Shown here piece after piece: positions 100 through 63,141 of a stretch of DNA of 64,000 nucleotides. The stretch is from Malacoraja senta. Its lineage: Eukaryota. Numbering within the stretch: position 1 is the stretch's first letter; every line of letters begins with the position of its first letter. The DNA lies in NCBI GenBank assembly GCA_038087875.1, contig CM075990.1:7440001-7504000 (forward strand), given 5' to 3'. The position numbers and the translations under genes are program-made. The notes under the pieces are model-generated. The model did no database searches. It saw only the letters and a list, made by a program, of their open reading frames with translations, and was not told the origin of the DNA.

Positions 100-1200
100 A
101 TTGATAAAGAAGCTGGGTGGGTAGTGTTGGAAGTGGCAGTTTCCTGCCACTTTGAATGGACTTCGTAGTGCTTAATGCAAAGCTGGAATTTTATAACCCT
201 GGATGGGTTACTGGCCAAGGATTCCCATGAATTGGGAAGGGCGCTAAGTTTTGTCATGGAAGCTTTGAACTCCAAGCCTTTCCAATGTCTACCTGGTAAT
301 CTCTGGCCCTGATGGAGCTTCAATGTACTCCATTTCAAAGAGTTTAGTATTGGGTCTATAAATGATATATGTCACAATGCCCATCAAAGTAGGCTAAGCC
401 AACTTGATGAAGAGGATGCTGCCCTGGGGAGATGACTTTGGCAGGGCAAGCAAGCTATTGTCAATGGATTTGGAGGACTTTGCAAAGACAGCATTGGTGG
501 TAGCAATCCAGTGCTTTGAGGCCCCCACAGCAGGCAGTCCATGCACGGGCAAATGGGCACGCCTAGTAAACTGTTTAAGAAGGAACTGCAGATGCTGGAA
601 AATTGAAGGTAGGCAAAAATGCTGGAGAAACTCAGCGGGTGAGGCAGCATCTATGGAGCAAAGGGAATAGGCAACGTTTTGGGTCAAAACCCTAGAAGGG
701 TTTCGACCCAAAACGTTGCCTATTTCCTTTGATAGGCATAAGGCAACGTTGCCTATTTCCTTTGCTCCATAGATGCTGCCTCACCTGCTGAGTTTCTCCA
801 GCATTTTCGTCAACCATCACTAGTAAACTATCAGCTTTAGGCTGGTTTGAGGTCTTGATCTTCAAACCCACTTTCGTTCAGGCTGCTAAAGGCTGGGGCA
901 TTGAAGATGGTGAAGAGTTTGTCATCTGGGAGGCGATGTCCAAGATATGGAAAGTGATTCACACTTTCCATGGTCTTGTGCATCTTTATTAGAGTTTAGT
1001 GTGGCGGAGATTGATTGCTGGAGGACTTTAGTTTGGACGTTTAATGCAAAGATCTTTCTCTTAAACATGTCACTGAATGAGTTTACTTAAACATATGATT
1101 GAATGGGTTGTGCAGGTTTTTAATAATTCACTGCAGCTCAATAACTGAGATTGACATGATCTTGATTCTGCAGAGATCACGGATGTTAATCAAATTTCCC
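100..1200 (-). mobile_element. Degraded RTE-clade LINE, C-terminal region
   Basis: Minus-strand remnants such as FPYLG, LKASM and WESLA..R resemble RTE ORF C-termini. Many stops and frameshifts. Confidence 0.45.
573..819. mobile_element. Fold-back Penelope-like terminal-repeat insertion
   Basis: Inverted arms around 671-720. TSD CTAGTAAACT at 563-572 and 820-829. Confidence 0.75.
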
Positions 1201-2269
1201 ACGCGGTCAAAGAGAGAACATATAAACTCTGTACAGCCAGAACCCGTAGTCGGGATAGAACTCTGATTAGTTCCACTCCAGTGGGAGATTCTTTAGATGC
1301 TTAGTGTACTTTCAGTGAGGATTGAAAAGGGGGTTAGTGTTGACAATAGACAATATATACAATAGACAATAGGTGCAGGAGTAGGCCATTCTGCCCTTCG
1401 AGCCAGCACCACCATTCAATGTGATCATGGCTAATCATTAACGTGGACCTATTGGCTAAAATCAAAATGTGCACACCTTTTTCTTAGCGGACGTAGAATG
1501 GAGATGAATTCCTGAAGACAACCAACATATTTGTCCTAATTGGTTCTAGAACTAATTAAGGAACTGACTATATTAGATTTAGTATTGAGTAATGATCCAG
1601 CCTAATTGTGTGTGAATATTTGTCTAATATTGGTTGAAGTATTGAGTTTGAAAGGGAGAAATGGTCATGTGGTCATAAAGCACAGAAACAGGCCCTCAGC
1701 CTAACTCCTACACACCAACCAAGATGTCCACCAATGGAGGTCCTATTTGTCCACAACTGATACAAACTATCCCCATGATTTTGAAGATAGACACAAAGTG
1801 CTGGAGCAACTCAGTGGGTCAGACAGTATTTCTGGAATAAAAGGATAGGTGATGTTTCAAGTCAGGCCCTTCTTCAGACTTCAAGATTCGGGCATGGCCG
1901 AGGGTATTAATGGGTAAGGTACTGTACAGCAGTGAGATATCTTATAAAATTACTCTGTATGATAGTTTGCGCTCCTTAGAACTTCAAGAAGACATCTGAT
2001 AATGTGTCTCTCAAGTGCTGAATCTCATTGAATCAGAAAGAGTTTTGACCAGGTTAGAATGGTAGGGATACCGAGCCAGCAGAGTGTAGGGTTCACAAAG
2101 ACCTGTGCTAGGTCTGCTGCTGCCACACGATTCATAAATTAACTAAACGATTTCGGAGAAAATAAAGTACAGATTCTGCATTTGCCGACAACACAGATAA
2201 AGGCAACAATGGAAGCAGTGCAAATGCACACATTAAGTTAGAGATATTAGCCATGTTGGAGAAAGTTAA

Positions 2270-2566
2270 TGGGGCGGCATGCTGGCGCAGTGGTAGAGTT
2301 GCTGCCTAACAGCGCTGGAGACCCGGGTTCAATCCTCACTGCGGATGCTCTCTGTATGGAGTTTGTAGGTTCTCTCTGTGACCCCGTGGGTTTTCTCTGG
2401 GTGCTCCGGTTACCAAAAGACGTAGAGGTTTGAAAGTCAGTTGGCTTTGGTAAAAAATTGAAAATTGTCCCTTGCGTGTAGGATAGTGAAAGTGTACAGG
2501 GCTCGCTGGTCGGCATGGACTTGGTGGGCTGAAGGGCCTGTTTCTACGCTGTATCTCTAAACTAAA
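2270..2566 (+). mobile_element. tRNA-derived V-SINE (HE1-like)
   Basis: A box TGGCGCAGTGG, B box GGTTCAATCC, central domain, CR1-type tail ending TCTAAACTAAA. Confidence 0.85.
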
Positions 2567-2619
2567 TTGGGCAGAAGTGTGGCAGCCTGACAGTATCAAC
2601 ATCAGGCATGTTAACATGA

Positions 2620-2800
2620 TGTAGAATTGCAGATGCTGGTTAATACACAAGTGCTGGAGTAACTCAGCAGGTCAGACAGCATCTCTGGAGAACATGGATA
2701 GGTAACATTACGGGTCGAGACCCTTCAGAAGTAGGCTCTGACCTGAAACGTCACCTATTCTCCAGCCATGCAGCCTGACCTGCTGAGTTACTCCAGCACT
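2620..2800. mobile_element. Fold-back Penelope-like terminal repeat
   Basis: GTGCTGGAGTAACTCAGCAGGTCAG ... CTGACCTGCTGAGTTACTCCAGCAC inverted arms around degenerate hammerhead motifs. Confidence 0.7.
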
Positions 2801-3899
2801 TCATGTCCATAACATTAGGTAGCAGCCATTCCTGCAATTGTGGACCCAAAAATGGTTGGATGGAGTAGAGTCTTGGAGTGATACACTGTGGAAACAGGCC
2901 CTTCGGCCACACTGGCCAACATGTCCCAGCTACACTAGTCCTACCTGCCCGTGTTTGGCCCATATCCAGACAAACCTGTCCCATCCGTGTACCTGTCTAA
3001 CTGTCTCTTAAACGTTGGGATAGTCTCTGCCTGAACTACATCCTCCGGCAGCTTTCTAAGTGGCAACCATCTAGGCTCAGAGAACGTCCAAAGTAACTTG
3101 CACATGGATCAATAAAATCTCATAAAAGGACAGAAAATAATTATAAAGGTTAATGGAATAGTGAGCGTTACTGTGCGAAGACTGCATTGGAAGGACAAGG
3201 ATGTGCTAAAACTACAGAGAGATAGTTGCAATATAAATGGGAAACTGAGCAGTTCTGGGCACCACATCTAAGGAAGAATAGTTTGATCACAACACAGATT
3301 TCATAGAATGCTATCTGGAACATAATGGTTGAACTATGAAGAGATATTATGCAAGGCAGAATTTAATATAGGATTTGGATGCTCAAGGGGTGATTTACAG
3401 CTTTTAGGATATTACGGAGAGATGGGTTTCACTGTATCTCGGTACACGTGACAATATACTAAACTCAACTAAACTCATAAACTAAGCTCAGATGGAGTGA
3501 AATTAGTTCTAATGAGGTCAAGGATGAGCGGACATGGTCTAACAATGAGCCAGACCCTTCATTGAAATGTAAACTCTCCTTCTCCCCCCACAGATGCTGC
3601 CTGACCTGCTAAGTGTTACCAGCACTACCAGATTCTACATGAGTCATAAGTGGCAGATACTGGAAATCAAAAATAAATACAGAAAATCAAGGAAACAATC
3701 GTCAAGCCTGGCAGGGTTGGCGGAGAGAGTCCTGCCGTGAGCTGCTCCACCATCAGTTCACAGCTACAGTCTTACCTTGAGGTGGGAGGGCATCAGACCT
3801 CAGAGCACAGATCCTGGGGCCATGCATTAAACCATAGCCCCTATTGCAGTCACTGGGAGAACATGCAAACTCCATGCAAGACAGCATCCAAGGTCGAGA

Positions 3900-8222: not shown

Positions 8223-9046
8223 TAACTCTATATAGAAACTAACAGAAACCCCTGATCAGATTCCATTGTGTCACTAGTTCCAGGTATTTCATCCTCTGAA
8301 CCTCACCTACCAGCCCCTCCACCACAAAACCCCGCAAGAACCAGCCAGTTGTGTGTTACTTTATTTAACAAACCTCTGACTCCCATTCCCACCAGAGTCT
8401 CCCCAGCCCCCTGCACCAAATCAAACACCTTTATTGCATTAGAAACAAAGAACTGCAGATGCTGATTAATACGCAAAAGGAGACTGTGCTGAAGTAACTC
8501 AGATGGCCAGGCAGTGTCTCTGGAGAACATGGATCAGTCATGCTTCTGGTTGTGATCCTTCTTCAGACTGATGGGTCTTGACCTATCCAAGTTTTCAAGA
8601 GATGCTGCCTGCATGACCTGCTGAATTACTCCAGCACTTTGTGACCTCAAGTACATTTTAACCTTTGAACCATTTTTGGATTTCTGTGTTGTCTGTAACC
8701 TTGTGGTCGTTGAAGGTGAATCATCTAAATCCCAGGCATCATTGCACAAGTTCCTCGGAGCAAGTTCCTCAAGCACCCCACCATCTCCAGTTGCTTCCTC
8801 AAAGACAAACCTTCAATGTTAAGGTAGGGTATTTTCTGATGTACAATGTCCAGGTACACCTGTAGCACCCCTGTGCATGCAGCAGTCCCTGCACAAGTGC
8901 AGGGACCTGGTTTGGGATGTGAAGTAGCAGATGAATTCCAGGCATTGTCACATCCAGCAAGAAAGTTTAAACGCCCCACCCCCTCCCCAGGTCTTTCTAT
9001 AGCGTTACATTACCAGTAACAAGTTCCTGCCCAGCAGTATGGAGTC

Positions 9047-9113
<67 letters not shown>

Positions 9114-14404: not shown

Positions 14405-15762
14405 NNNNNNNNNNNNNNNNNNNNNNNNNNNNNNNNNNNNNNNNNNNNNNNNNNNNNNNNNNNNNNNNNNNNNNNNNNNNNNNNNNNNNNNNNNNNNNNN
14501 NNNNNNNNNNNNNNNNNNNNNNNNNNNNNNNNNNNNNNNNNNNNNNNNNNNNNNNNNNNNNNNNNNNNNNNNNNNNNNNNNNNNNGGGGTGTGTATGATG
14601 TGTGTGTGTGAGTGGGGGTGTGAGTGGGGGTGTGTATGATGTGTGTCTATGTGTGTGTGTGAGTGGGGGGTGTTCTGCATGCTTCAGTAGACCAGGGAAT
14701 TAACGCTATTGTTATAGAGACTGCACTTGTTCAGGAGCAGGAATTATCAATCAACATCAGCAAGCTCATAATGCATTTAACATTCCAATGTGTAAATAAA
14801 TTCACGCTGACTAATCTTCTTCCCAGTTACAACCAGGATTATATCTGTGTACTCTTCAGTTTCTATCTTCCAATGAGAAAAGATGACTATTGTTATGTTT
14901 ATGTCCAAGAACAGCAGCATTTGCTCTTCTGTAATAAGATTGATTCCAACTGTAAATATAGATGATTGTTATTCTAATCCAGTGTATGTAAGGGGCATGA
15001 CTCTCACTGTGTGTATGTGGGCAATGATTCCAGCTTTGTGTTTATGGTGGCTGAACCACCCTGTGGATATTGAAGCTGAATCCAACCCTGTGGATGTGGC
15101 AAATAGTTCTAACCCTGTTATTTGGAGTATACTTCTCACCCTGTGTATATGAGGGCCCCTTTTGTTAGGGGCCTAATTCTGGCCTTGTGTAGTTGGACCA
15201 TAATTCTAACCCTGTTGGTTTAAGGGCATTGAGTGGATAATTCTATAAATTCTGTATTCAGAGGATAATTTAAATCTGTTTATTTAGAGAATAATTCTGG
15301 CCCTGTATATATGGGGATGCTTCAAGCCTTGAGCATGTGGCTTCTGAATTGCTCCTCTACACATCGAAGCTATTACTAATCCAGTGTACAAGTTATAATT
15401 ACAATCTACCTATTTGTGGTATGACTCGCTGTGCCTTTTGCTTCCATGCTGTTTAAATGGAGGCGGTTTCAAACCTTTTGCAAATGCTACCTGGAATAAA
15501 ACCATCTCAGTGTTAAAAATTGTTGACGGTGGAAATCTGGGATGAAAACAGAAACTGCAGGAAGCACTTAGCAGGTCAGGCAGCATGTGGGGACCAAGAA
15601 ACAGAGTTGACGTTTCAGGTTGACAACCTTCCTGATGTCAACTGTACGTATGCAAGGAGCATTGTACGGCTGTATACATGTTAGCTGTTTCCAACTGTAA
15701 AATGGGACTGCTGATTCTGACTGTGCATATGATTGCCTATTCTAGCCCTGTGCATGTGGAGT

Positions 15763-15855
15763 CTGAAGAAGGGTTTCAGCCCGAAACGTTGCCTATTTCC
15801 TTCGCTCCATAGATGCTGCCTCACCCGCTGAGTTTCTCCAGCATTTTTGTCTACC
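15763..15855 (+). mobile_element. Penelope-like terminal repeat with minimal hammerhead motif
   Basis: CTGAAGA A GGGT TTCA GCCC GAAACGTT followed by the family 3' sequence. Confidence 0.75.
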
Positions 15856-16654
15856 GTTAATTCTACATACATGGGCTAACACTGTGCATATTAAGGCTGA
15901 TTCTAACTATATGTGTGTCTAATTTTAAAACTTTGAATACGGTGTCTGATTGTCACCATGTCGATATTGAGGCTCATTGGAATACAGTACATATCAAAGC
16001 AAATTCTATTGCAGTGTAAGGGTATTGATTCTAATGCTGTTTATGTAATAGCTGGTTTTAAAGCCTGTGTATATAGTTGCTCCTTCTAGCCGTGTATAGC
16101 AATGCTCACTTTAACTTTGATATGGAAAATAACTCTATTCCTGTGTATGTTGAGGCTCATTCTAACACTGCATATATCAAAGCTGATTGTTATGCAGCCC
16201 ATGCTAACCTGGTTTATATGATGGCTGAATTTAGAACTGTGTACATGCACCTGATTCTATCTCTGTTGTTGATTTCAAAGTCTGAGTCTAAATCCTGCAC
16301 ATGCTGATTTTATACTTTGCATTTCCGGGCTGTTCTGTTCTTGTGCAGGTGGAAGCTGAAACTAATTTTGTATTTCATGGGGGCTGCAAAGATCATGTAT
16401 ATGAGGGCTGATTCTAATCATGCCTATATGACATGATTGTATGATGTCTATATGATGGTTGATTCCAATGCTGCATCTATTCCTGTAAATATAGAAACAG
16501 ATTCTGTCATTGTGTACAATCAGGGTAATTTTATACTAGCGCGCATGATCAGGTTCTGTGCACATTTGAGGATATTCTTTACTGTTGCACAGATGGGTCC
16601 TTTCCTCGTGTGTGTCAATCGATGCTCTAATTGTACATCTTGTGGTTTTAATCG

Positions 16655-17070
16655 AAGATAGGCACAAAAAGCTGGAGTTACTCAGTGGGTCACACAGCGT
16701 TTCTGGAGAAAGGGAATTGGTGACGTTTCAAGTTGAGACCCTTCAGACTGAGAGTCGGGGAAAGGGAGATGAGAGATATATAGATGGTGATATAGAGAGA
16801 TGTAGAACAAATGAATGAAAGTGTTTGAAAAAAAGTAAAGATGATAACGGAAAAAGGCCAATGTTGGCTGTGGGCTAGGTGAAAACAAGTTACAGACAAT
16901 GAGACTCAACAAGACGACTTTGAAAACGAGTACAATGACTGAGGTGGGGGAGGGACGGGGAGAGGGGGGATGCAAGCGTTACTTGGAGTTAGAGAAATCA
17001 ATATTCATATCACTGGGTTGTAAGTTGCCCAGGCAAAATATAAGGTGCTTCTTCTTCCAATTAGCGACCC
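16655..17070 (-). mobile_element. Penelope-like element 3' fragment (GIY-YIG C-terminus, UTR, terminal repeat)
   Basis: Reverse complement of the 62550-62930 region, including HLIF.LG.L.PS.MNIDFS. Confidence 0.75.
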
Positions 17071-17771
17071 TGGGTTTATAGAGGAGAATGTGAGCAAGGT
17101 TGGGACAGGCAGCTCCTCAAATCTGCTCCAACGTTCAACAAGATCGTGGCTCAACTTCTACCTCAATACCTATTCTCTCCTCACATCCCTCAATTCCTTT
17201 GCTATCCAGAAATCTATTGACTTGTGTTTTGAACATAATCAATGACATTATTCACGGAACTTCATCAATAACTTCCTGTGTTTATACAGCGACGAGGCAT
17301 AGTAACATGATTCAAGACTCTTCGCAAGAGCATTATCAGCAAAAGCTGACAAAGCCATATGGAGACATTAAAACAGTTTACTAGAAATGATCAACAAGGT
17401 AAATTTAAGGAGTAGGGAAAGGTGGGAGATTTTCGGAGACACTGGGGATTAAGGTCTGGATTATTGGTTACATTTGGGAAAGGGCTGGAAGCCAGAATTG
17501 GAGAAATGCAGAGATCTTGGACTAGTTTAGATGGAGGGATGATGCCATTGGAGGGATTGGCAAGGAAGGATTAGAATTGCTTATCTGGGAATCAATGCAC
17601 AACATCGAAAAGAGCGAATGGCCTACTCCACCACCTATTTTTCTATGTGTCCATGTGAGAAAATAACACTGCATCGGCAACAATCTTGGTTGACCTTGTG
17701 CTTGCACAGAGTAGAACGAGGGAGGTAAGGTCTGGTGTTGACCGCTCCAGGGAAGAACAAAGATGTGAAGG

Positions 17772-17922
17772 TAGACACAAAATGCTGGAGTAACTCAGCG
17801 GGTGAGTCAAGACCAGAAACGTCGCCCATTCCTTCTCTCCAGAGGTGCTGCCTCACCCGCTGAGTTACTCCAGTATTTTGTGTCTACCTTCGATTTGAAC
17901 CAGCACCTGCAGTTCTGTCTTA
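17772..17922. mobile_element. Fold-back Penelope-like terminal-repeat insertion
   Basis: Inverted arms. TSD AACAAAGA(T/C)GTGAAGG at 17756-17771 and 17923-17938. Confidence 0.75.
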
Positions 17923-21840: not shown

Positions 21841-23311
21841 AGGGGAACACAGTCGCAAGCACAGAGTCGTAGCTTTATGGAGTCCAACATCATCACGCCG
21901 GGATGGGTCGCATCCCACCAGAGAGACTGCTGCGTTGGTGTTGTACTCGCAATGGAGCTGCACTGGGAAGCCTTCGCATGGACTGCAGAGCCCAAGGCAT
22001 CCGATCATAAGCCTCCAAGGGGAAGCGCTCCCTGATTGTCCTGGCTCTCCTCACTCAGCTGAAGTCCATCCTGCAGGTTACAAAGAGTATTCAGGAATGA
22101 TTCAAAGGATAATTGTTTCAAACGTGCTTTATTTCTCATGTATGCGACTGCACGGTGAAATTCTTTTTGCATGTATTACACCTGCAGGCGCCACCATTTG
22201 GGCGCCGTTATCCTAAGTCCAAAGTCCGGTCGGCCCGCGCGCTCGATGTACAGGAGTGGTTTCCACGAACTGGCTCCTCTTACAACATTGGCGGATTGAA
22301 GATAGGGCCAAATGAATGGACCAGAAACATGGAAGATCAGACGTAATGGGAGGAAATGTGAGCACATTAATTTTGATAGAAAATAAACAGCAGGCAGAAT
22401 ATATTTTAAGTGATAAATGAGTTATTGATTGGGACGTATGGGTGTCAGGGGTTATGGGGAGAAGGCAGGAGAATGGGGTTGAAAGGGAAAGATGGATCAA
22501 CCATGATTAATTGACGGAGTAGACTTGATGGGCCAATTGGCCTAGTTCTGCAGGTCGATCATTTATGACCTTATGGGAGGGAGCCTTTTCAAAATGATTA
22601 AGTGTTTGAGAAAGAACCGAAGATGCTGGAAAAATCGAAGGTAGACAAAAATGCTGGAGAAACTCAGCGGGTGAGGCAGCATCTATGGAGTGAAGGAATA
22701 GGTGACGCTTCGGGTCGAGACTCTTCTTCCGATTTTTCAAAATGAAATGGGGAGAGTTCCGGGCAAGCTTATTCCTGCCTTAATTCTGCTCCTAGAACTT
22801 ATAAACTTGTGTGTTCTTGTACATGACGTTAACATGCTGCTGGAAACTACATTGATCTGTTTAACAAAATCATTTCAAGAGTCAACGGTGTTTTATTGCC
22901 TTATGTGCTGGAATGGAACAATGGAATTATTACTTGCAGCAGCACAGTTGGTTAAGAATGTACTCAATAGATAATAAGAAATAAAACGTTCAATAATCCA
23001 ATATAGTGCAAAAATAAAACAAAGACCCAAAATCTCGATTGCAGCTCAGGCATTCCTTACTTCAGAGTTTAGTTGGTTCGGAATCTTCAATAAGCTGATG
23101 GTTGTTGGGAGGAAGCTGTTCCTGAACCTGGATGTTATTGTTTTGAGACAATATTGAGATGAAGGCTATTCCTTCTTCCAGATGACAGGAGTGAAAAGAG
23201 AGCGTGGCCAGTATGGTGTGGGTCATTGTTAATGATGATGATTAAATTAGACAATAGACAATAGGTGCAGGAGTAGGCCATTCGGCCCTTCGAGCCATTC
23301 AATGTGATCAT

Positions 23312-23829: not shown

Positions 23830-24280
23830 TTTTAGACTTTAGAGATACAGCGGAGAAACAGGTCCTTTGGCCCACCGAGTCCATGCCGACTAGCGATCGC
23901 CCTGTACACAAACCTACACACACAAGGACAAATTTTACGCCTTACCAAAGGCAATGAACCAAAAAACCTGTACATCTTTGGAGCGCAATCAAAAATGCTG
24001 GAGAAACTCAGCGGGTGCAGCAGCATCTATGGAGCGAAGGAGATAGGCAACGTTTCGGGCCCGAAACGTTGCCTATTTCCTTCGCTCCATAGATGCTGCT
24101 GCACCCGCTGAGTTTCTCCAGCATTTTGTGTACCTTCGATTTTCCAGCATCTGCAGTTCCTTCTTTAACATCTTTGGAGTGTGGAAGGAAACCAGAGCAC
24201 CCGGAGAAAACCCATGTGGTTGCAGGGAGAACATAGAGCCTCTGTACAGACAGCGCCCGTGTTCAGGACCGAACCCTGGT
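23830..24280 (-). mobile_element. HE1-like V-SINE containing a nested fold-back Penelope-like insertion (23984-24167)
   Basis: SINE tail and body are interrupted. TSD ACATCTTTGGAG at 23972-23983 and 24168-24179. Confidence 0.8.
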
Positions 24281-25073
24281 AGAGACAATATTGAGATGAA
24301 GGCTATTCCTTCTTCCAGATGACAGGAGTGAAAAGAGAGCATGGCCAGGATGGTGTGGGTCGTTGATGATACTTGCTACCTTTTTGAGACAGCACTACTT
24401 ATAGATCCCTTCGATGGTAGGCAGGTCAGTACCCAAGATGTACCGGGCAGTGTTCACCACTTTTTGTAATCTCCTTCATTCATGGGCCAAACCAGGCCGT
24501 GACGTAACCAGTCAGTATGTTCTCACTGTACACCTGTGGAAGTTTACTCAAACCACTGTGCCACTGTGCCTCCCAAATGAGTGTGGATGAGTGTGTTGAA
24601 AGCCTCGCCAAAGCTGCCTGAACATGAATTACCTATCTTGTGATGCTGCAACATGTGACTGCTGTGATAAGTAGCAAAAACAGGCAGAACTAAGTGACCC
24701 TATAGCTAATGGATCAGATCAAAGCTCTACAGTTTTTCCATCTCGAGGCATGGACGTTAATGAGCAATTAAACAGATAATGAGAGATGCATAAAGGGACA
24801 CAATGTGCTGGAGTAACTCAGCAGGTCTGGCGGCATCACTGGAGAATATGGATAGGTGACGTTTCGGGCCGAGATCCTTCAGACGTCAGAGTCACAAAAA
24901 CTTCATCTTTCCATGTTCTGCAGAGATGCTACCTGACCTGCTGAGTTAGTCCAGCATTTTGTGTCCTATTGTTTGTTAACCAACATCTGCAGTTCTTTGT
25001 TTCGAGCTAATGGGAGGCGATTCTCTCCAGTCTTCACCGATGATCGTGTCCAGCTTGTGAGTGTGAAAATTAA

Positions 25074-35450: not shown

Positions 35451-35451
35451 T

Positions 35452-36830: not shown

Positions 36831-37411
36831 TGAGGCTTCAGAATTTGGATGAACTTGTTCATTAAGACTGATATGGGGAAGTTGCCGAATAATGGAATAG
36901 TTATCAACAAGCAGGAGAGAAGCTGTGGCAAGATTAGTATCAACTGAGGGTGTGGAAATGAAAATGAATAGTCTTAATGGTAACAAGAATATGGTTCAAA
37001 ATACAACACTAGCTGAAGTTTGACGAGAATGTCGTAAACAGTCTTGTTCACTTAGTTCAGTTTTGTTGCGTGCTAACCAGTCAGCAGAAAGACAATACAT
37101 GATTACAATCGATCCATTTACAGTGTATAGATACATGATTAGGGAATAATGTTTAGTGCAAGGTAAAGCCAGCAAAGTCCGATTAAGGATCATCTGAGGG
37201 TCACAAAAGAGGTAGATAGTAGTTCAGGACTGCTCTCTGGTTGTGGTAGGATGATTCAGTTGTCTGATAACAGCTGGGAAGAAACTGTCCCTGAATCTGG
37301 TGGTTTCTTACAGATAGTTTACATGGAGAAGGACGGAGTCTGTCGCTGGGAACCGGTCCCAAAAGCCAACAGATTTAGTTTACTCAATATTGCCATGGGA
37401 GAGACAAAATC

Positions 37412-37645
37412 TGGAGGAAGGAACTGCAGATGCTGATTTAACTCGAATATAGACACAAGATGCTGGAGTAACCCTGCGGGACAGGCAACATCTCTGGAGA
37501 GAAGGAATGTGTGACATTTCGGGTCGAGACCTTTCTTCAGACTGATCTGAAAGGTCTGAAGAAGGGTTTTAAACCGAAACGTACCCACTCCTTCTCACCA
37601 GAGTTGCTGCCTGTCCCGCTGAGTTATTCCAGCATTTTGTGTCTA
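37412..37645. mobile_element. Fold-back Penelope-like terminal repeat with back-to-back hammerhead motifs
   Basis: Minus-strand motif 37513-37540 and plus-strand motif 37556-37583, with inverted arms. Confidence 0.75.
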
Positions 37646-40470: not shown

Positions 40471-40796
40471 CAAAGTAAATTAACCTATCCGTCTTTCTCT
40501 TGAACGTAATGTTTGTGTCTCCATGGCTCTCGTGGTTGGAGAATTCCAAAGATTCAATATCTCTGGGTGTAGAAATTTCCCTCCTCGTCCCTCTCCTGAG
40601 TGGCTGGCCGCTTATTAGGAGACTGTGGCCCTTGGTTTGAGACCCCCCAGCCAGGTGAAACATCAACTTCACATCTATCCTCCTAAATAATGTATATTTT
40701 ACTTAGACCGCCATAAATATATTCAACATGTGAGGATCAATGCTGTCACGAGAAGAAGAACATTCGTGGATTGTAAGTATAGTGGATGTCTGATGT

Positions 40797-40890
40797 CTGA
40801 AGAAGGGTCTCGACCCGAAACGTTGCCTATTTCCTTCGGTCCATAGATGCTGCCTCACCCGCTGAGTTTCTCCAGCATTTTTGTCTACCG
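40797..40890 (+). mobile_element. Penelope-like terminal repeat with minimal hammerhead motif
   Basis: CTGAAGA A GGGT CTCG ACCC GAAACGTT. Confidence 0.8.
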
Positions 40891-41266
40891 AGGATTTTAA
40901 CCCGGTGTTATGCCCAACATACCCTGCTAGATTAATTCCTAGAGATTTAGGGATGATGCTAGCAAACCTTTACTGCACCTTCTCACTTGTATCCTAGACT
41001 TCACCTTACCCTTCCTGAGATGAGGAGATCAAATCTGTGTGCAGTTCTCCACTGTATTCCGGTACGGTGGTCCTACACTGCCAGGGTGAGGTCAAACTAC
41101 GGGTTTAAACCGAAGATGGACACAAAATGCTGGAGTAACTCAGCAGGACAGGCAGCATCTCTGGAGAGAAGGAATGGGTGATGCTTTGGTTCGAGACACT
41201 TCTTCAGACTGAGGGACCTATTCTTGTGCTGTACTATATTCTATGTCAGGATGTGGACCTGATATG

Positions 41267-41504
41267 TAGAAAGGAACTGCAGATGCTGGTTAAAACCAAA
41301 GATAGACAAAAAAGGCTGGAGTAACTCAGCGTTACTTTTTTGCATACCTGTCATTCATTTGTTCTACATCACCATCTATAGCCCTTGTTGCCCTCTCCCC
41401 TGACTCTCAGTCTGAAGAAGGGTCTTGAACAGAAATGTCACCTAGTCCATTTCTCCAGAGATGCTGCCTGACCCGCTGGGTTACTCCAGCTTTTTGTGTC
41501 TATC
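41267..41504. mobile_element. Fold-back Penelope-like insertion
   Basis: Inverted arms. TSD TGGACCTGATATG at 41254-41266 and 41505-41517. Confidence 0.75.
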
Positions 41505-46445: not shown

Positions 46446-47829
46446 CCGCTTCTACTCAGAATCCAAATGAAACAGACAGATCTACACATAAATTTAAGTT
46501 GCTTGAGGCGATCCAATCCATCAAATACTTTTAAAAATCCTAAAGTCCTCTCTGTCAAGTCCCTTCAGTCTGCACTTTTCGAGAAGAAAGGGTCCCAGAG
46601 TGTTCCGTCTTTTCCTTTCTCACACTTCTGCACAGACCCCCAGGGAGAGCAGTAAATGCTGCCTTGGCAGCATTGCCCAGGAAAATGAACCACAATTAAA
46701 AATTCCACCCTCTTCTCCCCATTTAATCTTCGCTGCAACGTGGTGTCGAAAACCTCTCCGCAATTTTGCAAGTGGAGTCCCAGTGAGGTTTGTTTACAAG
46801 TCCATCATGTTCGATCCATGTGCAAATGATCTTCAGCGCTTTGTTTTTTTATTTCTACGGATATTTAAATCCGTGCCTTGATCAGTGATCAGTGATTCTG
46901 CCCCCCCCCCCCCATCTGCTCCTTTGCCCTATTTCATCACAGACACCCCCAAGTATTGAGTGACCCTATTACTGTTCCAATCTAAATACAACAGCGAATG
47001 TGTATCTGTTTGGAAGTTTATTTGCAGCTTAAATGCCTATCTGAAGGGTTATTCATGTCATTCGAGGGTTACTGGCTCACATCTCTCCCCTGTGTAATTA
47101 CAATTCCCCCACTAAATTTAGTGTCAGATACAAAGTCTGACGTTGTCATTTAGTTTCCTGCGCTGAAGGCATTTAATAAGGAAGAGAAGTGGGAAAGGGC
47201 TAGTTTGCCCTCGAACCTGCTTTGACGTCCAGCAAGATTGTGGCCAATCCAATCCTTTGTGCAGTTGTGCTCAACAATTCCCCTATTTGTTGATTCCCTC
47301 AATCTAAAAATCTATCATTCTCGGTCTTAAATAAGCAACAAATGAGCACCCACAGCCTTCCGCAGAGAATTTCAGAGATGTACAATCCTTGCGTGGAAAT
47401 TTCTCAACTCGGTTCTCAATGTCGAACGGAAAGCAAAACAGAATTGCAGGTGTTAGAATCTGAAATAAACAGGAATGCAGGAAGAACTCAGCCAGTTTAT
47501 CAGCATCTGTGGTGAGAAACCAGCTAGTGCTTCAGTTCGAAGACCCTTCATCACCACTAAGAACAAGAGGAAACAAGTTCAAACGATGTCTTCGATCCGA
47601 AACACTAACGGGGCTCTCTTTCCACGGATGTTCCATTGCTAGCTGAGTTCTTCTAGCATTTCTGTTTTGTTCTAAATGTTCAACCGCTTCCCTGAGACCA
47701 TACCCCACTAAGCGTCAACTCAGAAAGGAAATGTGTAAGTATCCACTTTCAGTTGCTGACCTCTGAAATGGTTCAGTGCAAACACCCCTCATTCTTCAAA
47801 CTCCCCTGTTTCTCATCAACACGTGATGC

Positions 47830-55923: not shown

Positions 55924-58525
55924 AATGTTAGTTCCTTTTGTCTCCACAGATGCTGCCTGATCTGCTGTGTATTTCTGGTGCGTTTCTTTAAAGAGCCTTC
56001 ATACGGGTGGTGGCAAATGTGTCAGGACTAGCAGTCTGACCCATTCTCCCCCTCTCTCCATCTCACTGTCGATCTTTCCTTCACTTCCCCTCTTTCCTTT
56101 GCTCACAGATCCCTTTCCTCCCCCAACACTCCCTCAGTTGNNNNNNNNNNNNNNNNNNNNNNNNNNNNNNNNNNNNNNNNNNNNNNNNNNNNNNNNNNNN
56201 NNNNNNNNNNNNNNNNNNNNNNNNNNNNNNNNNNNNNNNNNNNNNNNNNNNNNNNNNNNNNNNNNNNNNNNNNNNNNNNNNNNNNNNNNNNNNNNNNNNN
56301 NNNNNNNNNNNNNNNNNNNNNNNNNNNNNNNNNNNNNNNNNNNNNNNNNNNNNNNNNNNNNNNNNNNNNNNNNNNNNNNNNNNNNNNNNNNNNNNNNNNN
56401 NNNNNNNNNNNNNNNNNNNNNGAGGAGTCAGGGACTGCACAGCTCATACAGCCAGATGTGTTCATGCTGCATGGACGTCCTGTCGCTGATCCCACAGCAC
56501 AGCTGAACAACATGTGTGTGTGTGTGCGTGCATACGCGTATGTGTGTACATCTGCATGCATGTGTGTGTATGAGAAACATGAGATTGTGTAGGAAAGAAC
56601 TGGAAATGCTGGTTTAAATCGAAGATAGACACAAAATGCTGGAGTAACTCAGCGGGACAGGCAGCATCTCTGCGGAGAAGGAATGAGTGACGTTTCGGGT
56701 CAAGAGCCTTCTTCCTACTCCAACATTTTGTGCCAATGGAAGAGATTTTNNNNNNNNNNNNNNNNNNNNNNNNNNNNNNNNNNNNNNNNNNNNNNNNNNN
56801 NNNNNNNNNNNNNNNNNNNNNNNNNNNNNNNNNNNNNNNNNNNNNNNNNNNNNNNNNNNNNNNNNNNNNNNNNNNNNNNNNNNNNNNNNNNNNNNNNNNN
56901 NNNNNNNNNNNNNNNNNNNNNNNNNNNNNAGATGGACAAAGGTGATTGTATCTGATAGTGGCACAGACTTGTGTGCGACTGTGTGAAATAGGGGGAGTAA
57001 ATCAGGTGAGAGAGGGAGAGAGAGAGAGAGAGTGGGAGATGAGGAGGAGTACGCAGACAGTGAGAGTAGTTTCACGTAATGGCAGCAGCTCAGAGAAGAT
57101 AAGACTGTCAGAGCTGGGAGAATGATTAGTTTATTCAGCCCCTCAGTCTGCCCCAGCATTTAATAAGGTCAGGGATGATGTTGTTGATCGCTTCTACTTC
57201 ACTCCTCTAGACCCGTGTCTCTCCCTCTCTGGCTGAATTGAACATTTTGGTGAGATTATTAATACAGGTTGCCGTACGTGTGGATGAGTAGATTTACTGC
57301 CGATGGCAGGAATAGAAGGTTCTCATCTTGCCGGTTGCGGACTTGCACACGGCTCCAGGGAGTAGTATGTGTCTAACACCACTGGCTGCACTGGCAGTCC
57401 AAGTTTGGAGCAGGCCCTGGCTCCAGTGCAGATCTGGACCCAACACTGGCTGCACTGGCTGTCCAAATCTCCCCGAAACCTTCGGCATTCCAGAGAAAAC
57501 TATCCAGGTCTGTCCAATGTCTCCTTGTAGCTCATCCAGGCACCATTCTGGTAAAACCTCCCGTACGCCCTATCCAATGCTTCCCTATCCTTCCTGTAAT
57601 GGGGTGATCAGAAATGCATGCAATAGTCTAAGTGTCTAGAGTCAAGAATGTTTTATTATCATATGTCCCAGATGGAACAATGACATTCTTACTTGCAGCA
57701 GCACCACAGCATATGTAAACATAGTACACTGTAAACAATATGATAAATGAGAGAGAAAAGTTCAGTGTGTGTGTAAAAATACACATACCCACATATATAT
57801 ATATATAAATTATTTATTATATACACACATACATACGTAACTAATGTCCTATAAAGCTGCATCATGACATCCAGACTTCTACTCAAAGCCCCAACCTATG
57901 AAGCAAGCATACCGTATACCCTCTTTACCATTCCATCTACATATGTTGACACTTTCAGGGAGCTGTGGACTTGACCCCCAAGATCTCTCTGTACATCAAT
58001 GCCATTGAGCGTCATGCCATTAATTGGATATTTTCCCCTTGCATTTGACCTCCCAAAGTAGAACACCTCACACTCGCTCGGTTTGAACTCCGTCTGCATT
58101 TTCTCCGCTCATATCTGTCGCCGATCTACATATCCCGCTGCATCAAGTCAATTTCAAGTCAAGTCAAGTCAATTTTATTTCTATAACACATTTAAAATGT
58201 TGACCAAAGTGCTTTACATCAGTGCAGGTACTAACGTGGTACAAAGATCTAACAATACATACGTAAATACATACGTACAGCGCTCCCTCAGAGGACCTCA
58301 AGAAACGCTTGTGAGTAGAAATAAGTTTTAAGTCTAGATTTAAAGGAGTCGATGGAGGGGGAAGTTCTGATGAGAAGAGGGATGCTGTTCCACAGTCTAC
58401 ATATGCATATGTAGCAACACTACATATCCTCAAGGAGGTGAGGTGTGGAGGCGTCACTCTCCCTGTTGGGGAAGCTGGAGGCACAAGAGCGACAAGATAG
58501 AAGAGATACAAGATAGACAAGATAG

Positions 58526-59021
58526 CATCGGTGAGACCAAGCGGAGGCTTGGCGATCGTTTCGCCGAACACCTCCGGTCGGTCCGCAATAACCAACCTGA
58601 ACTCCCGGTGGCTCAGCACTTCAACTCCCCCTCCCATTCCGTATCTGACCTCTCTGTCCTGGGTCTCCTCCATGGCCACAGCGAGCAACACCGTAAATTG
58701 GAGGAAATGCACCTCATATTCCGCTTGGGCAGTCTACATCCTGGTGGCCTGAACGTTGAATTCTCCCAACTCTGCTAGCCCTTGCTGTCCCCTCCCCTTC
58801 ATCAGCCATCTGGTTGTCTCCTCCCCTCCCCCAGCCCTCGGGCTCCTCCTCCGCCTTTTTCCTTTTTTCCTTTCTTCTCCCCACCCCCTATCAGTCTGAA
58901 GAAGGGGTTCGGCCCGAAACGTTACCTATTTCCTTCGCTCCATAGATGCTGCTGCACCTGCTGAGTTTCTCCAGCATTTTTGTGTACCTTTGATTTTCCA
59001 GCATCTGCAGTTCCTTCTTTA
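58526..59021 (+). mobile_element. 5'-truncated Penelope-like retroelement (GIY-YIG endonuclease C-terminus plus hammerhead-bearing terminal repeat)
   Basis: IGETKRRLGDRFAEHLRSV...PVAQHFNSPSH...RKLEE.HLIFRLGSLHPGGLN. Hammerhead motif 58896-58923. TSD ACAAGATAGAAGAG at 58492-58505 and 59022-59035. Confidence 0.9.
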
Positions 59022-61680: not shown

Positions 61681-61734
61681 ACAGAAGTGATGGAGGTGGG
61701 CAGAATCGTGAGAATAATAGACCAGGTAAACACA

Positions 61735-62040
61735 CACTGCTGCCTAGAGTAGGGGGGTCGAGAACCAGAGAACATAGGTTTAAGGTGAGGGGGTAAAGAT
61801 TTAATAGGAATCTGAGGAATAACTTATTTACACAAAGGGTGCTGGATGCATGGAATGAGCTGCTGGAGGAGGTAGTTGAGGCAGGGTCCATCGTAACATT
61901 TAGAAACATTTAGACAGGTACATGAATAGGATAGGTTAAGAGGGATATGGGCCATACGCAGGCAGGTAGGACTAGTGTAGATCGGACATGGTCGGTGTGG
62001 CTAAGGGGCCTGTTTCCGCGCTGTGTGATTCCATGACTTA
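61735..62040 (+). mobile_element. CR1 LINE 3' end
   Basis: Same subfamily as 44167-44490, in the opposite orientation. Confidence 0.8.
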
Positions 62041-62093
62041 ATGCAGACTAGGAACGGAGCACAAGGAACTTGATTCACTCTTTGTCAGCTGTT

Positions 62094-62150
62094 ACCAGGC
62101 AAGAATGGACTTGATACCCCTCACCAGGCAAGAATGGACTTGATACCCCT
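62094..62150 (+). repeat. 28-bp perfect tandem duplication
   Basis: ACCAGGCAAGAATGGACTTGATACCCCT at 62094-62121 and 62123-62150. Confidence 0.9.
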
Positions 62151-62378
62151 TACACACTTAGAGTGAGAGGGGTATCGCCGAAACATCACAGAGGCTCAAT
62201 CTCTGCCACTCGATGCAGCTCAATGGGGGATGAAGATTTAAGGAGACCCCCATGAGAGGTTGGCCCTGACCAGTGGAGGTGGGGGCTAGCCATGTTGGCT
62301 CGTCTGGGGGAGGATATTATCGGATATGGTCACCAGTTTCATGAATGGTACGTGCCTAACTGCCATTGGGAAGGTGGT

Positions 62379-62954
62379 ATACATCGGCGAAACCAAACTT
62401 AGACTGAGCAATCGTTTTGCTGAACATCTTCACTCAGTCCTCCTGAACCTACCTGATTTCCCAGTTGCTAAACACTTTAATTCTCCTTCCCATTCCCACA
62501 CTGACCTTTCTGCCCTCGGTCTCCTCCATCGTCAGAGTGAAGCTAAACGCAAATTGGAGGAACAGCACCTCATATTTCGCTTGGGCAACTTACGGCACAG
62601 TGGTATGAATATTGATTTCTCTAAATTCAGGTATCCCCGGCATTCCCTCTCTCTCTCTACCCCTCCCCCACCCAAGTCGCACCAGCTTCTTGTTTTCACC
62701 CAACAAACAGGTAAAAATGGCCTGTTTCCTTTATCATCGTTACCTTTTTGCATATCGTTCATTCATTGTTCTTTATCTCTCTACATTATCATCTATATCT
62801 CTCATTTCTCTTATCCCTAATCGGTCTGAAGAAGGATTTCGATCCGAAACGTCACCTATTCCTTCTCTGCAGAGATGCTGTCTGTCCCGCTGAGTTACTA
62901 CAGCATTTTGTGTCTATCTTCGGTTTAAACCAGCATCTGCAGTTCCTTCCTACA
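62379..62954 (+). mobile_element. 5'-truncated Penelope-like retroelement (GIY-YIG C-terminus plus hammerhead-bearing terminal repeat)
   Basis: YIGETKLRLSNRFAEHL...PVAKHFNSPSHSH...RKLEEQHLIFRLG. TSD CATTGGGAAGGTGGT at 62364-62378 and 62955-62969. Confidence 0.9.
62819..62860 (+). ncRNA. Putative minimal type I hammerhead ribozyme
   Basis: Stem I AATCGGT/ACCTATT (6 of 7 pairs), core CTGAAGA, stem II GGAT-TTCG-ATCC, GAAAC, cleavage triplet GTC. Confidence 0.7.
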
Positions 62955-63141
62955 CATTGGGAAGGTGGTGTTGTGTTGAGCCACTTTCTTGAATCATTGA
63001 AGTGCCTCTGATGACGGATCTATCGCTGTGCTGTTGAGTGTCAGATATCACACAGGACAATGGCCGTAGAGTGAATAAGAAATAAGTCCTGGAAAAAGTC
63101 ACGAGCAGGACCGCAGATAAGTTCCCAGATAAATTCCTGCA

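What the first reader, a model, noticed from the sequence alone, without database searches (positions are those of the whole stretch)
563..62969. A family of tiny mobile fold-back elements built from a hammerhead-bearing Penelope terminal repeat, each with its own 10-16 bp TSD
Seen: one ~130-bp unit (CTGAAGAAGGG..CCCGAAACGT[C/T]...GATGCTGCC...GCTGAGTT.CTCCAGCA...CTGCAGTTCC) recurs more than 20 times. Many copies are 150-250 bp inverted pairs (573-819, 2620-2800, 8445-8645, 17772-17922, 23984-24167, 24795-25000, 37412-37645, 41267-41504). Clean flanking duplications occur at 563/820 (10 bp), 17756/17923 (16 bp, 1 mismatch), 23972/24168 (12 bp) and 41254/41505 (13 bp). The same unit ends the two GIY-YIG-coding copies (58526-59021, 62379-62954), which carry 14- and 15-bp TSDs. 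Known: Penelope-like elements (PLEs) carry minimal hammerheads in their terminal repeats and often have an inverted 5' segment. Inference: these non-coding fold-backs are complete, independent insertion events. They may be a retrozyme-like non-autonomous family mobilised by the PLE RT/GIY-YIG.
Basis: partly seen in the sequence, partly recalled or inferred. Interest (0 to 1): 0.85.

Follow-up and report, generated by a model that had tools for sequence, protein, structure and literature searches.

The report
Leader-only Penelope retroelement fold-back insertions
The tiny inverted-repeat elements are real, separate insertions, but they look like very short, dead-on-arrival by-products of an ordinary Penelope-like retrotransposon copying its hammerhead-bearing terminal repeat onto both DNA strands, not a new self-propagating mobile family.

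Summary
A ~100-135 bp unit (minimal hammerhead core, conserved body, optional 34-nt tail) occurs as 46 arms at about 35 loci in 64 kb. All eight listed inverted pairs exist, and I found two more plus two with mini-arms. Eleven elements have target-site duplications of 10-16 bp that chance does not explain. The unit ends two 5'-truncated copies that encode the C-terminal part of a Penelope-type GIY-YIG endonuclease.

- Every fold-back junction is different.
- Fold-backs arise in at least three subfamilies that also have coding copies.
- The unit never forms tandem arrays.
- Only 4 of 46 arms keep an intact hammerhead core, and none of these is in a fold-back.

Two regularities match published Penelope biology. 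In 10/10 fold-backs one arm ends at model position ~566 (with tail) and the other at ~520-536 (without tail). The 5' ends pile up at positions 431-444, at the 5' edge of the hammerhead.

Most likely each element is a dead-on-arrival product of target-primed reverse transcription on both strands, from two adjacent internal start sites, running off a short leader. This is a new member of a known kind. First readers noted the same pattern in two other windows of this genome.

The parts
573..819 (.). Fold-back, T subfamily. Long arm (-) 573-~693 with tail; short arm (+) ~694-819 ending at model position ~536, with an internal template-switch duplication. TSD CTAGTAAACT at 563-572 and 820-829.
2625..2809 (.). 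Fold-back, CCATG subfamily. Long arm (-), short arm (+). Junction at the palindromic CTTCAGAAG. Only a degenerate TSD candidate (11/13) at 2612-2624 and 2810-2822.
8446..8646 (.). Fold-back, CCATG subfamily, old. Long arm (-) reaching model position 429; short arm (+) from ~443. No clear TSD.
17772..17922 (.). Fold-back, G subfamily. Short arm (-) 17772-17809 (model 490-532); long arm (+) 17810-17922 (model 447-566). TSD of 16 bp with 1 mismatch at 17756-17771 and 17923-17938.
23984..24167 (.). Youngest fold-back, T subfamily. The arms are 100% identical over 70 shared model columns (model positions 440-535). Perfect palindromic centre GGGCCC inside hammerhead stem II. Short arm (-), long arm (+). 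TSD ACATCTTTGGAG at 23972-23983 and 24168-24179.
24787..25007 (.). Fold-back, CCATG subfamily. Short arm (-) reaches model position 435. Long arm (+) starts at ~448-456 and has the tail. Weak TSD TAATG[A/G]GAG.
25858..26129 (.). Older, more complex fold-back. The short arm (-) runs through the hammerhead into 3'UTR-like sequence. It is followed by a short direct fragment (model 505-531) and then the long arm (+), model 471-566.
37399..37643 (.). Fold-back, G subfamily. Long arm (-) has 16 extra nt beyond the tail. Short arm (+) ends at model position ~530.
41267..41504 (.). Fold-back, G subfamily. Long arm (-) covers only model 499-566. Short arm (+) covers model 292-533, including 3'UTR. Neither arm can be a copy of the other. 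TSD TGGACCTGATATG at 41254-41266 and 41505-41517.
47439..47667 (.). Old fold-back. Long arm (-), short arm (+). Weak TSD GTTCT[C/A]AATGT.
28631..28784 (-). Long arm (model 434-566) plus a 20-nt inverted mini-arm (model ~515-534) at its 5' end. TSD of 14 bp with 1 mismatch at 28617-28630 and 28785-28798.
56590..56741 (-). Long arm (model 434-566) plus a 22-nt inverted mini-arm (model 507-528). An assembly gap starts at 56750, so the TSD on that side cannot be assessed.
22598..22733 (-). Solo unit, T subfamily, long form. Its 5' end at model position ~435 abuts the TSD directly. TSD of 12 bp at 22586-22597 and 22734-22745.
33968..34098 (-). Solo unit, G subfamily, long form. Its 5' end at model position ~435-437 abuts the TSD. 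TSD of 15 bp with 1 mismatch at 33953-33967 and 34099-34113.
15731..15880 (+). Solo unit with an intact hammerhead core. It is flanked by ~25-30 nt of filler on each side that is partly inverted-repeated. TSD ACTGTGCATAT at 15720-15730 and 15881-15891.
58527..59021 (+). Copy A, T subfamily. A 5'-truncated PLE made of the GIY-YIG C-terminal 83 codons (IGETK...), a 3'UTR, then the unit with tail. TSD ACAAGATAGAAGAG at 58492-58505 and 59022-59035, with a stuttered (ACAAGATAG) filler at 58506-58526.
62379..62954 (+). Copy B, G subfamily. A 5'-truncated PLE made of the GIY-YIG C-terminus (YIGETK...), a 3'UTR, then the unit with tail. Its hammerhead has a compensated stem II (GGAU/AUCC). TSD CATTGGGAAGGTGGT at 62364-62378 and 62955-62969.
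16636..17097 (-). Third longer PLE 3' fragment (model 129-550), short-form end. Carries the CTGA---AGG deletion in the hammerhead box.
40794..40902 (+). Solo short-form unit with an intact hammerhead core and a 7-nt stutter (TGTCTGA TGTCTGAAG) at its 5' end.
41097..41212 (-). Example of the other solo arms. The remainder, listed, start at 1781, 3563, 11065, 15533, 19830, 33808, 38402, 42333, 43111, 54209 and 55509.

Best explanation
Each solo unit and each fold-back is a dead-on-arrival insertion made by the RT/GIY-YIG protein of an autonomous Penelope-like element (PLE). They are not copies of a fold-back master.

The unit is the element's pseudo-LTR, or leader. It runs from model position ~434, at the 5' edge of the minimal hammerhead, to ~532, with an optional 34-nt tail to ~566.

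Proposed steps, all inferred:
1. The endonuclease makes staggered nicks 10-16 bp apart, which produces the TSD.
2. Both 3'-OH ends prime reverse transcription on PLE RNA. One starts at the inner start site (~532, short arm) and the other at the outer start site (~566, long arm with tail).
3. Both cDNAs usually run only ~100-135 nt, to a discrete RNA 5' end at A434/G435. This lies in the motif TCAGTC, a perfect initiator-like sequence, so the products are run-off leader cDNAs.
4. The two antisense cDNA ends are joined head to head, often within the self-complementary hammerhead stem II (GGGTCTCGACCC) or CTTCAGAAG. This gives a unique junction each time.
5. If only one strand is extended, a solo unit results.

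Shown here: the anatomy, the TSDs, the long/short rule, the 5' pile-up, the junction diversity and the subfamily structure.
For: 1. PLE origin. The unit ends copies A and B, whose ORF fragments match C-termini of RVT_1+GIY-YIG proteins at up to 85% identity.

2. Independent insertions. Eleven TSDs of 10-16 bp have p of 0.003-0.013 each, against ~0.4 expected by chance over 35 loci.

3. Long/short rule. In 10/10 fold-backs and 2/2 mini-arm elements, one arm ends at model position ~556-566 and the other at ~520-536. Another example lies at L001:11390-11490. The probability is at most 0.001 if the ends were chosen independently. The 34-nt difference equals the published one-sided 30-40 bp PLE tail (PMC8557442, PMC3846280). 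It also fits the two adjacent internal RT start sites of Anolis Poseidon, whose protein cleaves and extends both strands in vitro (PMC11167929).

4. 5' ends. 19 of 40 arms start at model positions 431-444. TSD-delimited solo copies start at 435-437. Six of ten such ends keep G435, and four keep A434-G435.

5. The junctions all differ: 444|441, 434|438, 429|443, 490|447, 452|452, 435|~452, 429|431, 499|292.

6. Arms within a fold-back share private variants. Identity is 100% and 95% in the youngest and falls to 76-83% in the old ones.

7. Fold-backs occur in the T, G and CCATG subfamilies. T and G have coding copies A and B, and CCATG shares its CTGA---AGG deletion with the long copy 17097m.

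8. In 41267, 25858 and L001:11390, neither arm is contained in the other. These need two separate templated syntheses.
Against: - No full-length PLE of this family is in the window, and look-ups for one failed. The position of the unit at the 5' end of an intact element, and a transcription start at 434, are therefore inferred and not seen.
- In vitro, Anolis Poseidon showed no strand preference between the two start sites (PMC11167929). The strict long/short pairing seen here needs an extra assumption, such as one RNA or an asymmetric dimer.
- Arkhipova et al. 2013 (PMC3846280) favoured self-priming at junction palindromes. Seven of ten fold-backs here would also fit that.
- The 5'-stutter support for a true RNA end is only marginal (3 of ~20 against 0.7 expected).
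- A. vaga data show pseudo-LTRs can suffice in cis for mobilisation, so re-mobilisation of some copies is not excluded.
- The sample is one 64-kb window plus one 12.7-kb locus.
Confidence: 0.7

Rival explanations
1. A self-propagating non-autonomous family. The pseudo-LTR-only units or fold-backs are themselves transcribed, for example from the initiator-like TCAGTC, and are repeatedly re-mobilised in trans by the PLE protein. This would be SINE-like or retrozyme-like.
For: - The copy number of short units far exceeds that of ORF-bearing copies: about 30 loci against 3-4 in the window.
- The 5' end is discrete.
- Pseudo-LTRs suffice in cis for trans-mobilisation in A. vaga (PMC3846280).
- Vertebrate non-LTR retrozymes derive from PLE pseudo-LTRs (bioRxiv 10.64898/2026.07.22.740005).
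Against: - No two of the 10-13 fold-backs share a junction.
- Subfamily markers of the short copies are those of coding copies.
- There are no tandem direct repeats, so no two same-sense hammerheads could excise a circle.
- Only 4 of 46 arms have an intact core.
- Most short copies lack the 5' strand of helix I.
- The copies stop at the RT start sites. The Anolis PLE needs ~55 nt of RNA downstream of the start (PMC11167929).
Confidence: 0.17
2. Self-priming (snap-back). A single target-primed cDNA folds back on the palindromic hammerhead stem II and copies itself, making the second arm. Only one DNA strand is primed by the element.
For: - Palindromic centres occur at several junctions: GGGCCC at 24059 and CTTCAGAAG at 2726.
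- The short arm lies within the coordinates of the long arm in 7 of 10 cases.
- Arkhipova et al. 2013 proposed self-priming for such palindromic junctions (PMC3846280).
Against: - The long arm always has a tail that the short arm lacks, so the long arm can never be a copy of the short one.
- In 41267, 25858 and L001:11390 the short arm contains sequence absent from the long arm, so the short arm is not a copy of the long one either.
- A self-copy would have no reason to stop at a fixed point 34 nt before the end.
Confidence: 0.1
3. A MITE-like or Foldback DNA transposon with terminal inverted repeats, unrelated to retrotransposition. For solo units, an alternative is solo pseudo-LTRs left by recombination between the two repeats of a full element.
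For: The elements are inverted repeats flanked by TSDs. Solo pseudo-LTRs are reported in A. vaga (PMC3846280).
Against: - TSD length varies from 10 to 16 bp instead of being fixed.
- The two termini are unequal (long versus short), and inner junctions vary.
- The arms are collinear with the 3' end of RT/EN-coding copies.
- Recombination cannot make head-to-head pairs.
- 100-bp repeats recombine rarely relative to the ~30 short loci seen.
Confidence: 0.02

Closest known systems
Canonical insertion architecture of endonuclease-containing Penelope-like elements: inverted pseudo-LTR, pseudo-LTR, ORF, pseudo-LTR, with a 30-40 bp tail at one end (Evgen'ev & Arkhipova 2005; Arkhipova et al. 2013, PMC3846280; Craig et al. 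2021, PMC8557442)
   Same: - Head-to-head inverted terminal repeats with palindromic junctions.
- A tail on only one of the inverted repeats. In A. vaga the inverted pseudo-LTR is 37 bp shorter; here the difference is 34 nt.
- Short TSDs of variable length.
- A hammerhead inside the repeat.
- An initiator-like motif.
- Heavy 5' truncation.
   Different: The ORF-containing body is absent here, so only the two repeats remain (150-250 bp in total). These ORF-less forms are the majority of copies in this window. The published descriptions I read focus on ORF-bearing or gene-capturing inserts.
Two-site internal initiation and double-strand priming by Anolis Poseidon PLE in vitro (Frangieh et al. 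2024, PMC11167929)
   Same: - Two adjacent reverse-transcription start sites whose spacing equals the genomic tail.
- Start sites ~70-105 nt downstream of the hammerhead cleavage site (85-92 nt in Anolis).
- Both target strands are extended.
- A short RNA just downstream of the hammerhead suffices as template.
   Different: In vitro the start site showed no strand bias. Here each genomic fold-back uses one site per arm (10/10). The ORF start lies differently relative to the hammerhead.
Minimal dimeric hammerheads of PLEs dispersed in metazoan genomes (Cervera & de la Pena 2014, PMC4209133)
   Same: - CUGANGA and GAAA boxes.
- An unpaired nucleotide before stem II.
- The G10.1-C11.1 pair.
- Palindromic ACGU in place of helix III.
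- Mostly single dispersed motifs, with some pairs 100-700 bp apart on opposite strands.
   Different: Stem II here has 4 bp rather than 6-8. Most copies are decayed or lack the 5' strand of helix I. That paper did not analyse TSDs, junctions or arm ends.
Animal non-LTR retrozymes (Cervera & de la Pena 2020, PMC7229834; Li, Clavereau & Pollet 2026, bioRxiv 10.64898/2026.07.22.740005)
   Same: Short non-coding sequences derived from PLE pseudo-LTRs that carry type I hammerheads. Monomeric dispersed copies are reported.
   Different: Retrozymes are direct tandem repeats whose two same-sense ribozymes release a circular RNA. Here there are no tandem arrays, the arms are inverted and the ribozymes are mostly broken.
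Twin priming of LINE-1, giving 5'-inverted insertions (Ostertag & Kazazian 2001; cited from my own knowledge)
   Same: The second DNA end of a staggered break also primes reverse transcription. This gives an inverted 5' segment inside one TSD.
   Different: In L1 the two segments partition one RNA, so the inverted part lies upstream of the direct part. Here both arms cover the same RNA region, and each starts at a defined internal start site.

Membership tests
Endonuclease-containing Penelope-like element (PLE) | C-terminal GIY-YIG endonuclease coding sequence joined to the repeat | tested here: met
   Copies A and B encode (Y)IGETK...HFN.P.H... They are 49-85% identical to C-termini of proteins with RVT_1 plus GIY-YIG (P0001, P0143, P0055). 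Pfam alone does not recognise the truncated 83-aa fragment.
Endonuclease-containing Penelope-like element (PLE) | Telomerase-like reverse transcriptase domain in the same ORF | tested here: not met
   No PLE-type RT is present in the window (tblastn). The RVT_1 ORF at 60075-60668(-) matches the LINE-like half of a chimeric gene call. All PLE copies here are 5'-truncated, so the RT is seen only in database relatives.
Endonuclease-containing Penelope-like element (PLE) | Pseudo-LTRs, direct or inverted, with an inverted 5'-truncated copy at the 5' end | tested here: met
   There are 10 head-to-head pairs plus 2 mini-arm cases, and no tail-to-tail pair within 60 bp.
Endonuclease-containing Penelope-like element (PLE) | Optional 30-40 bp tail at only one end of the insertion | tested here: met
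   The 3' ends fall in two classes, model positions ~520-536 and ~556-566. Every fold-back has one of each.
Endonuclease-containing Penelope-like element (PLE) | Short TSDs of variable length | tested here: met
   Eleven TSDs of 10-16 bp.
PLE minimal hammerhead (min-HHR) | CUGANGA and GAAA catalytic boxes followed by a cleavable GUH | tested here: met
   The consensus is CTGAAGA-A-GGGTCTCGACCC-GAAAC-GTC (T subfamily GTT). It is intact in 4 of 46 arms, and 12 arms keep both boxes.
PLE minimal hammerhead (min-HHR) | [quoted passage not shown] | tested here: met
   There is an extra A after CUGAAGA, stem II is GGGU/ACCC, and the ACGU palindrome is present. Copy B has a compensated stem II, GGAU/AUCC.
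PLE minimal hammerhead (min-HHR) | Match to a curated hammerhead covariance model | tested here: not met
   No Rfam hammerhead hit at the gathering threshold, nor at E<=10. I expect this follows from the absent helix III, on which those models probably depend (my inference, not checked here). The call as a hammerhead therefore rests on motif criteria only.
PLE minimal hammerhead (min-HHR) | Self-cleavage (as a dimer) | not testable with these tools
   Needs in vitro transcription of dimeric constructs.
Non-LTR retrozyme | Direct tandem repeats, each monomer with a same-sense hammerhead | tested here: not met
   Tandem Repeats Finder finds no array of the unit. Adjacent arms are inverted or are independent insertions of different subfamilies.
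Non-LTR retrozyme | Circular RNA product | not testable with these tools
   No RNA data are available.
MITE / Foldback DNA transposon | Fixed TSD length and conserved, equal terminal inverted repeats | tested here: not met
   TSDs range from 10 to 16 bp, and the termini are unequal (long versus short).

The most novel reading that the evidence does not exclude
The pseudo-LTR-only units and fold-backs are not mere by-products. They form a self-sustaining non-autonomous lineage, transcribed from the initiator-like TCAGTC at the hammerhead edge and re-mobilised in trans by the PLE protein. They would be an inverted-repeat counterpart of animal retrozymes. A milder new point that the data do support is that the two reverse-transcription start sites are used one per DNA strand within a single integration event.
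Probability: 0.12. Interest if true: 0.6.

Novelty: new member of a known kind. Interest (0 to 1): 0.3.

Why it matters
The finding gives genomic, in vivo-derived support for a transposition mechanism so far seen only in vitro for one lizard element: priming on both strands from two adjacent internal start sites. It adds one regularity that the in vitro work did not show, namely one start site per arm in every fold-back.

It also explains why minimal hammerhead motifs are scattered in thousands of single or oppositely oriented copies in fish and amphibian genomes. They are leader-only cDNAs, not ribozyme genes or retrozymes.

For genome annotation, these 100-250 bp palindromic pieces should be assigned to the Penelope family rather than called as MITEs or novel elements.

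It does not reveal a new class of mobile element.

Tried and rejected
- Rfam at the gathering threshold on the whole window, and at E<=10 on 62700-63000, gave no hammerhead family. The ribozyme call rests on published min-HHR criteria.
- Pfam on the ORFs as listed, and on the correct-frame GIY-YIG fragment, gave no hit. Homology was established through a full HMMER search and Pfam on the hits.
- A literal search for the unit's sequence in the paper library found nothing.
- Look-ups for a full-length relative in a fish genome failed. P0030 is not on record, P0007 returned no DNA, and P0001 proved to be a chimeric LINE-RT plus truncated-PLE gene call. The two full-length PLE contigs obtained (L002, L003) are distant, metagenome-derived relatives and were used only for hammerhead comparison.
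- I considered the snap-back model and rejected it as the general mechanism. The long arm is never contained in the short arm, and the short arm is not contained in the long arm in at least three cases.
- The apparent protein homology upstream of the TSDs of A and B (tblastn extensions) is not real similarity.
- The 5'-stutter test for a true RNA end was only marginal, at 3 of ~20 against 0.7 expected.
- Three CCATG fold-backs align to each other across their centres at 67-74%. Their junction coordinates and long/short orientation differ, so they are not copies of one master.
- I did not test stem II covariation statistically, because most copies are decaying neutrally.

Full report
**Observation**

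The window contains six N runs at exactly the stated coordinates. None of the elements discussed spans a gap. Only the element at 56590-56741 lies 9 bp from one.

The seed motif CTGAAGAAGGG (at most 1 mismatch) occurs 15 times against 1.9 expected. I built an nhmmer profile of 563 positions from the 3' end of copy B (62379-62954) and iterated it once. It finds 46 arms at E<0.01, which cluster into about 35 loci. In profile coordinates the layout is:
- GIY-YIG C-terminus: 1-~250
- 3'UTR: ~250-433
- Hammerhead-like core: CTGAAGA starts at 437, and the predicted cleavage site is after C464
- Conserved body: to ~532 (...CAGCATTTTGTGTCTATC)
- Further segment: to ~566 (TTCGGTTTAAACCAGCATCTGCAGTTCCTTCCTA)

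I found two more, at 25858-26129 and 47439-47667. Two apparent solo copies carry 20-22 nt inverted mini-arms (28631-28784, 56590-56741).

**Target-site duplications**

An ungapped flank-to-flank scan was compared with 3000-5000 random placements of the same geometry. It gives p of 0.003-0.013 for:
- the TSDs of copies A and B
- five further ones: 37388/37644, 22586/22734, 33953/34099, 28617/28785 and 15720/15881

About 0.4 such matches would be expected by chance over 35 loci, and eleven are seen. These are genuine, separate insertion events. TSD length varies from 10 to 16 bp. The three oldest fold-backs have lost recognisable TSDs.

**What the unit is**

Copies A and B end in the unit and begin with an ORF fragment, (Y)IGETK(R/L)RL..RFAEHL...HFNSPSHS.... 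Pfam does not recognise this truncated piece. A full HMMER search finds 1485 relatives. The longer ones carry RVT_1 plus GIY-YIG with the match at their extreme C-terminus, for example P0143 (813 aa) and P0055 (609 aa). The unit is therefore the 3' terminal region of an endonuclease-containing Penelope-like element (PLE).

No PLE-type RT is present in the window. The RVT_1 ORF at 60075-60668(-) is LINE-like.

**The hammerhead**

The consensus is CUGAAGA-A-GGGUCUCGACCC-GAAAC-GUC. It meets the published criteria for PLE minimal hammerheads (PMC4209133):
- both catalytic boxes
- an unpaired nucleotide before stem II
- the G10.1-C11.1 pair
- palindromic ACGU replacing helix III, which implies action as a dimer

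Copy B has a doubly compensated stem II, GGAU/AUCC. Rfam has no hit, even at E<=10. Only four arms (15763, 40797, 58896, 62826) keep an intact core. No fold-back has one, because the junction cuts it or mutations break it. One subfamily carries a 3-nt deletion in the CUGANGA box in both short and long copies. Copies that start at 434-437 also lack the 5' strand of helix I.

**Regularities**

1. 3' ends. They fall into two sharp classes, ~520-536 (short) and ~556-566 (long). Every fold-back has exactly one of each: 10/10, plus 2/2 mini-arm elements, plus one more at L001:11390-11490. If ends were chosen independently, the probability is at most 0.001.
2. 5' ends. Nineteen of 40 arms start at 431-444. 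TSD-delimited solo copies start at 435-437, directly against the TSD. Several keep A434-G435 of the motif TCAGTC.
3. Junctions. All are different.
4. Arms. The two arms of a fold-back share private variants. They are 100% and 95% identical in the youngest elements and 76-83% in old ones. This fits identity at insertion followed by independent decay.
5. Subfamilies. Fold-backs occur in three subfamilies (T, G, CCATG), whose diagnostic positions are shared with ORF-bearing or long copies.
6. Arrangement. There are no tandem direct arrays.

**Comparison with the literature**

The typical PLE insert is an inverted pseudo-LTR, a pseudo-LTR, the ORF and a second pseudo-LTR. It carries a 30-40 bp tail on only one of the inverted repeats, a palindrome at the inverted junction, an initiator-like motif in the repeat and TSDs of about 8-10 bp (PMC3846280, PMC8557442). 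Solo pseudo-LTRs have been reported (PMC3846280). Pairs of minimal hammerheads 100-700 bp apart on opposite strands have also been reported (PMC4209133).

Frangieh et al. 2024 (PMC11167929) studied the Anolis Poseidon protein. They showed that:
- it cleaves and extends both target strands
- reverse transcription starts at two adjacent internal RNA sites, and the sequence between them is the tail
- the start sites lie 85-92 nt downstream of the hammerhead cut
- RNA about 55 nt beyond the start site is needed

In the window the two end classes lie ~70 and ~102 nt downstream of the predicted cut and are 34 nt apart.

**Mechanism (inferred)**

Staggered nicks produce the TSD. Both 3'-OH ends prime on PLE RNA, one at the inner site and one at the outer site. 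Both cDNAs usually run off after ~100-135 nt at a discrete RNA 5' end at A434/G435.

That position is most simply a transcription start in the upstream pseudo-LTR. The motif TCAGTC is a perfect YYANWYY initiator, and the G subfamily has a TATA-like motif at about -30. The products would then be leader-only cDNAs.

The two antisense cDNA ends are joined head to head, helped by the self-complementary stem II and CTTCAGAAG. This explains why junctions cluster there yet differ in detail.

Self-priming cannot be the general route. The long arm always has a tail that the short arm lacks. In 41267, 25858 and L001:11390 the short arm holds sequence that the long arm lacks.

The inserted copies stop at the start sites. 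By analogy with Anolis they lack the downstream RNA needed to be templates again, so they are dead on arrival.

**Verdict**

The reading as independent insertions made by PLE machinery is supported. The reading as a distinct, self-propagating, retrozyme-like fold-back family is not supported. Its own refutation test (unique junctions) is met, although the lengths show a discrete peak rather than a continuum.

This is a new member, and a clear minimal form, of a known kind of structure. The strict one-site-per-arm rule and the leader run-off are modestly informative for PLE mechanism.

First readers noted the same pattern in two other windows of this genome (s1-140362, s1-191406). I did not examine those windows.

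**Limits**

- The sample is one 64-kb window plus a 12.7-kb locus.
- No full-length element of this family was available.
- No RNA data were available.
- No Dfam or Repbase comparison could be made.

Noticed in passing
window 58527 and 62379; L001:6418: Copies A and B are independent insertions with different TSDs and subfamilies. Both are 5'-truncated within about 6 nt of the same codon, (Y)IGETK, of the GIY-YIG domain. A third copy in L001 starts only ~14 codons further upstream. This may be a second preferred cDNA stop or RNA end.
   Followed up: partly
window 58492-58526: The 5' TSD of copy A is followed by two extra stuttered copies of ACAAGATAG. This fits the reported PLE insertion bias for microsatellite-like targets.
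   Followed up: no
window 60075-60668 (-) and 52779-53151 (+): Reverse-transcriptase (RVT_1) ORF fragments. They match the LINE-like N-terminal half of P0001 and not PLE RTs. P0001 itself is a chimeric gene call (LINE RT plus truncated PLE endonuclease) in assembly GCA_028641065.1.
   Followed up: partly
window 2700-2728, 24860-24884, ~16950 (arm 17097m): One subfamily carries CTGA---AGG, a 3-nt deletion inside the hammerhead CUGANGA box. It occurs in both short and long copies, so the ribozyme core was already broken in an active source lineage.
   Followed up: partly
window unit positions ~486-566 (e.g. 22598-22680, 24090-24167): The strongly conserved GAGATGCTGCC contains an ATG. In the young T subfamily its frame stays open to the end of the tail. 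This recalls A. vaga pseudo-LTRs that hold the first 12-22 codons of the PLE ORF. The G consensus has an in-frame TAA.
   Followed up: no
window 15700-15900: The solo unit at 15731-15880 is bracketed by ~25-30 nt fillers that are partly inverted repeats of each other (TAGCCCTGTGCATGT and ACATACATGGGCTA). GCTGATTCT lies outside both TSD copies. This is an unusually complex target or junction.
   Followed up: no
window 35400-35450, 59880-59925, 43060-43110: Another interspersed repeat (...ATCTGAGGAAGGATGTGCTGGCTCTGGAGAGGGTCC...) recurs at least three times. One copy truncates the PLE unit at 43111-43158.
   Followed up: no
L002 (JGI metagenome contig, 3266 bp): A circularly assembled tandem PLE. 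Its min-HHR CTGAGGA-A-GACUACAUAGUC-GAAAUAUU lies at 2833-2865, and the ORF ATG is at 2991. The motif CAACATCTGCA just after the ATG resembles the tail motif CAGCATCTGCA of the window's unit.
   Followed up: no
window 13573-13914: An earlier first-reader note places NRG3 exon 1 here, so the window is vertebrate genic or intronic DNA. I did not check this.
   Followed up: no
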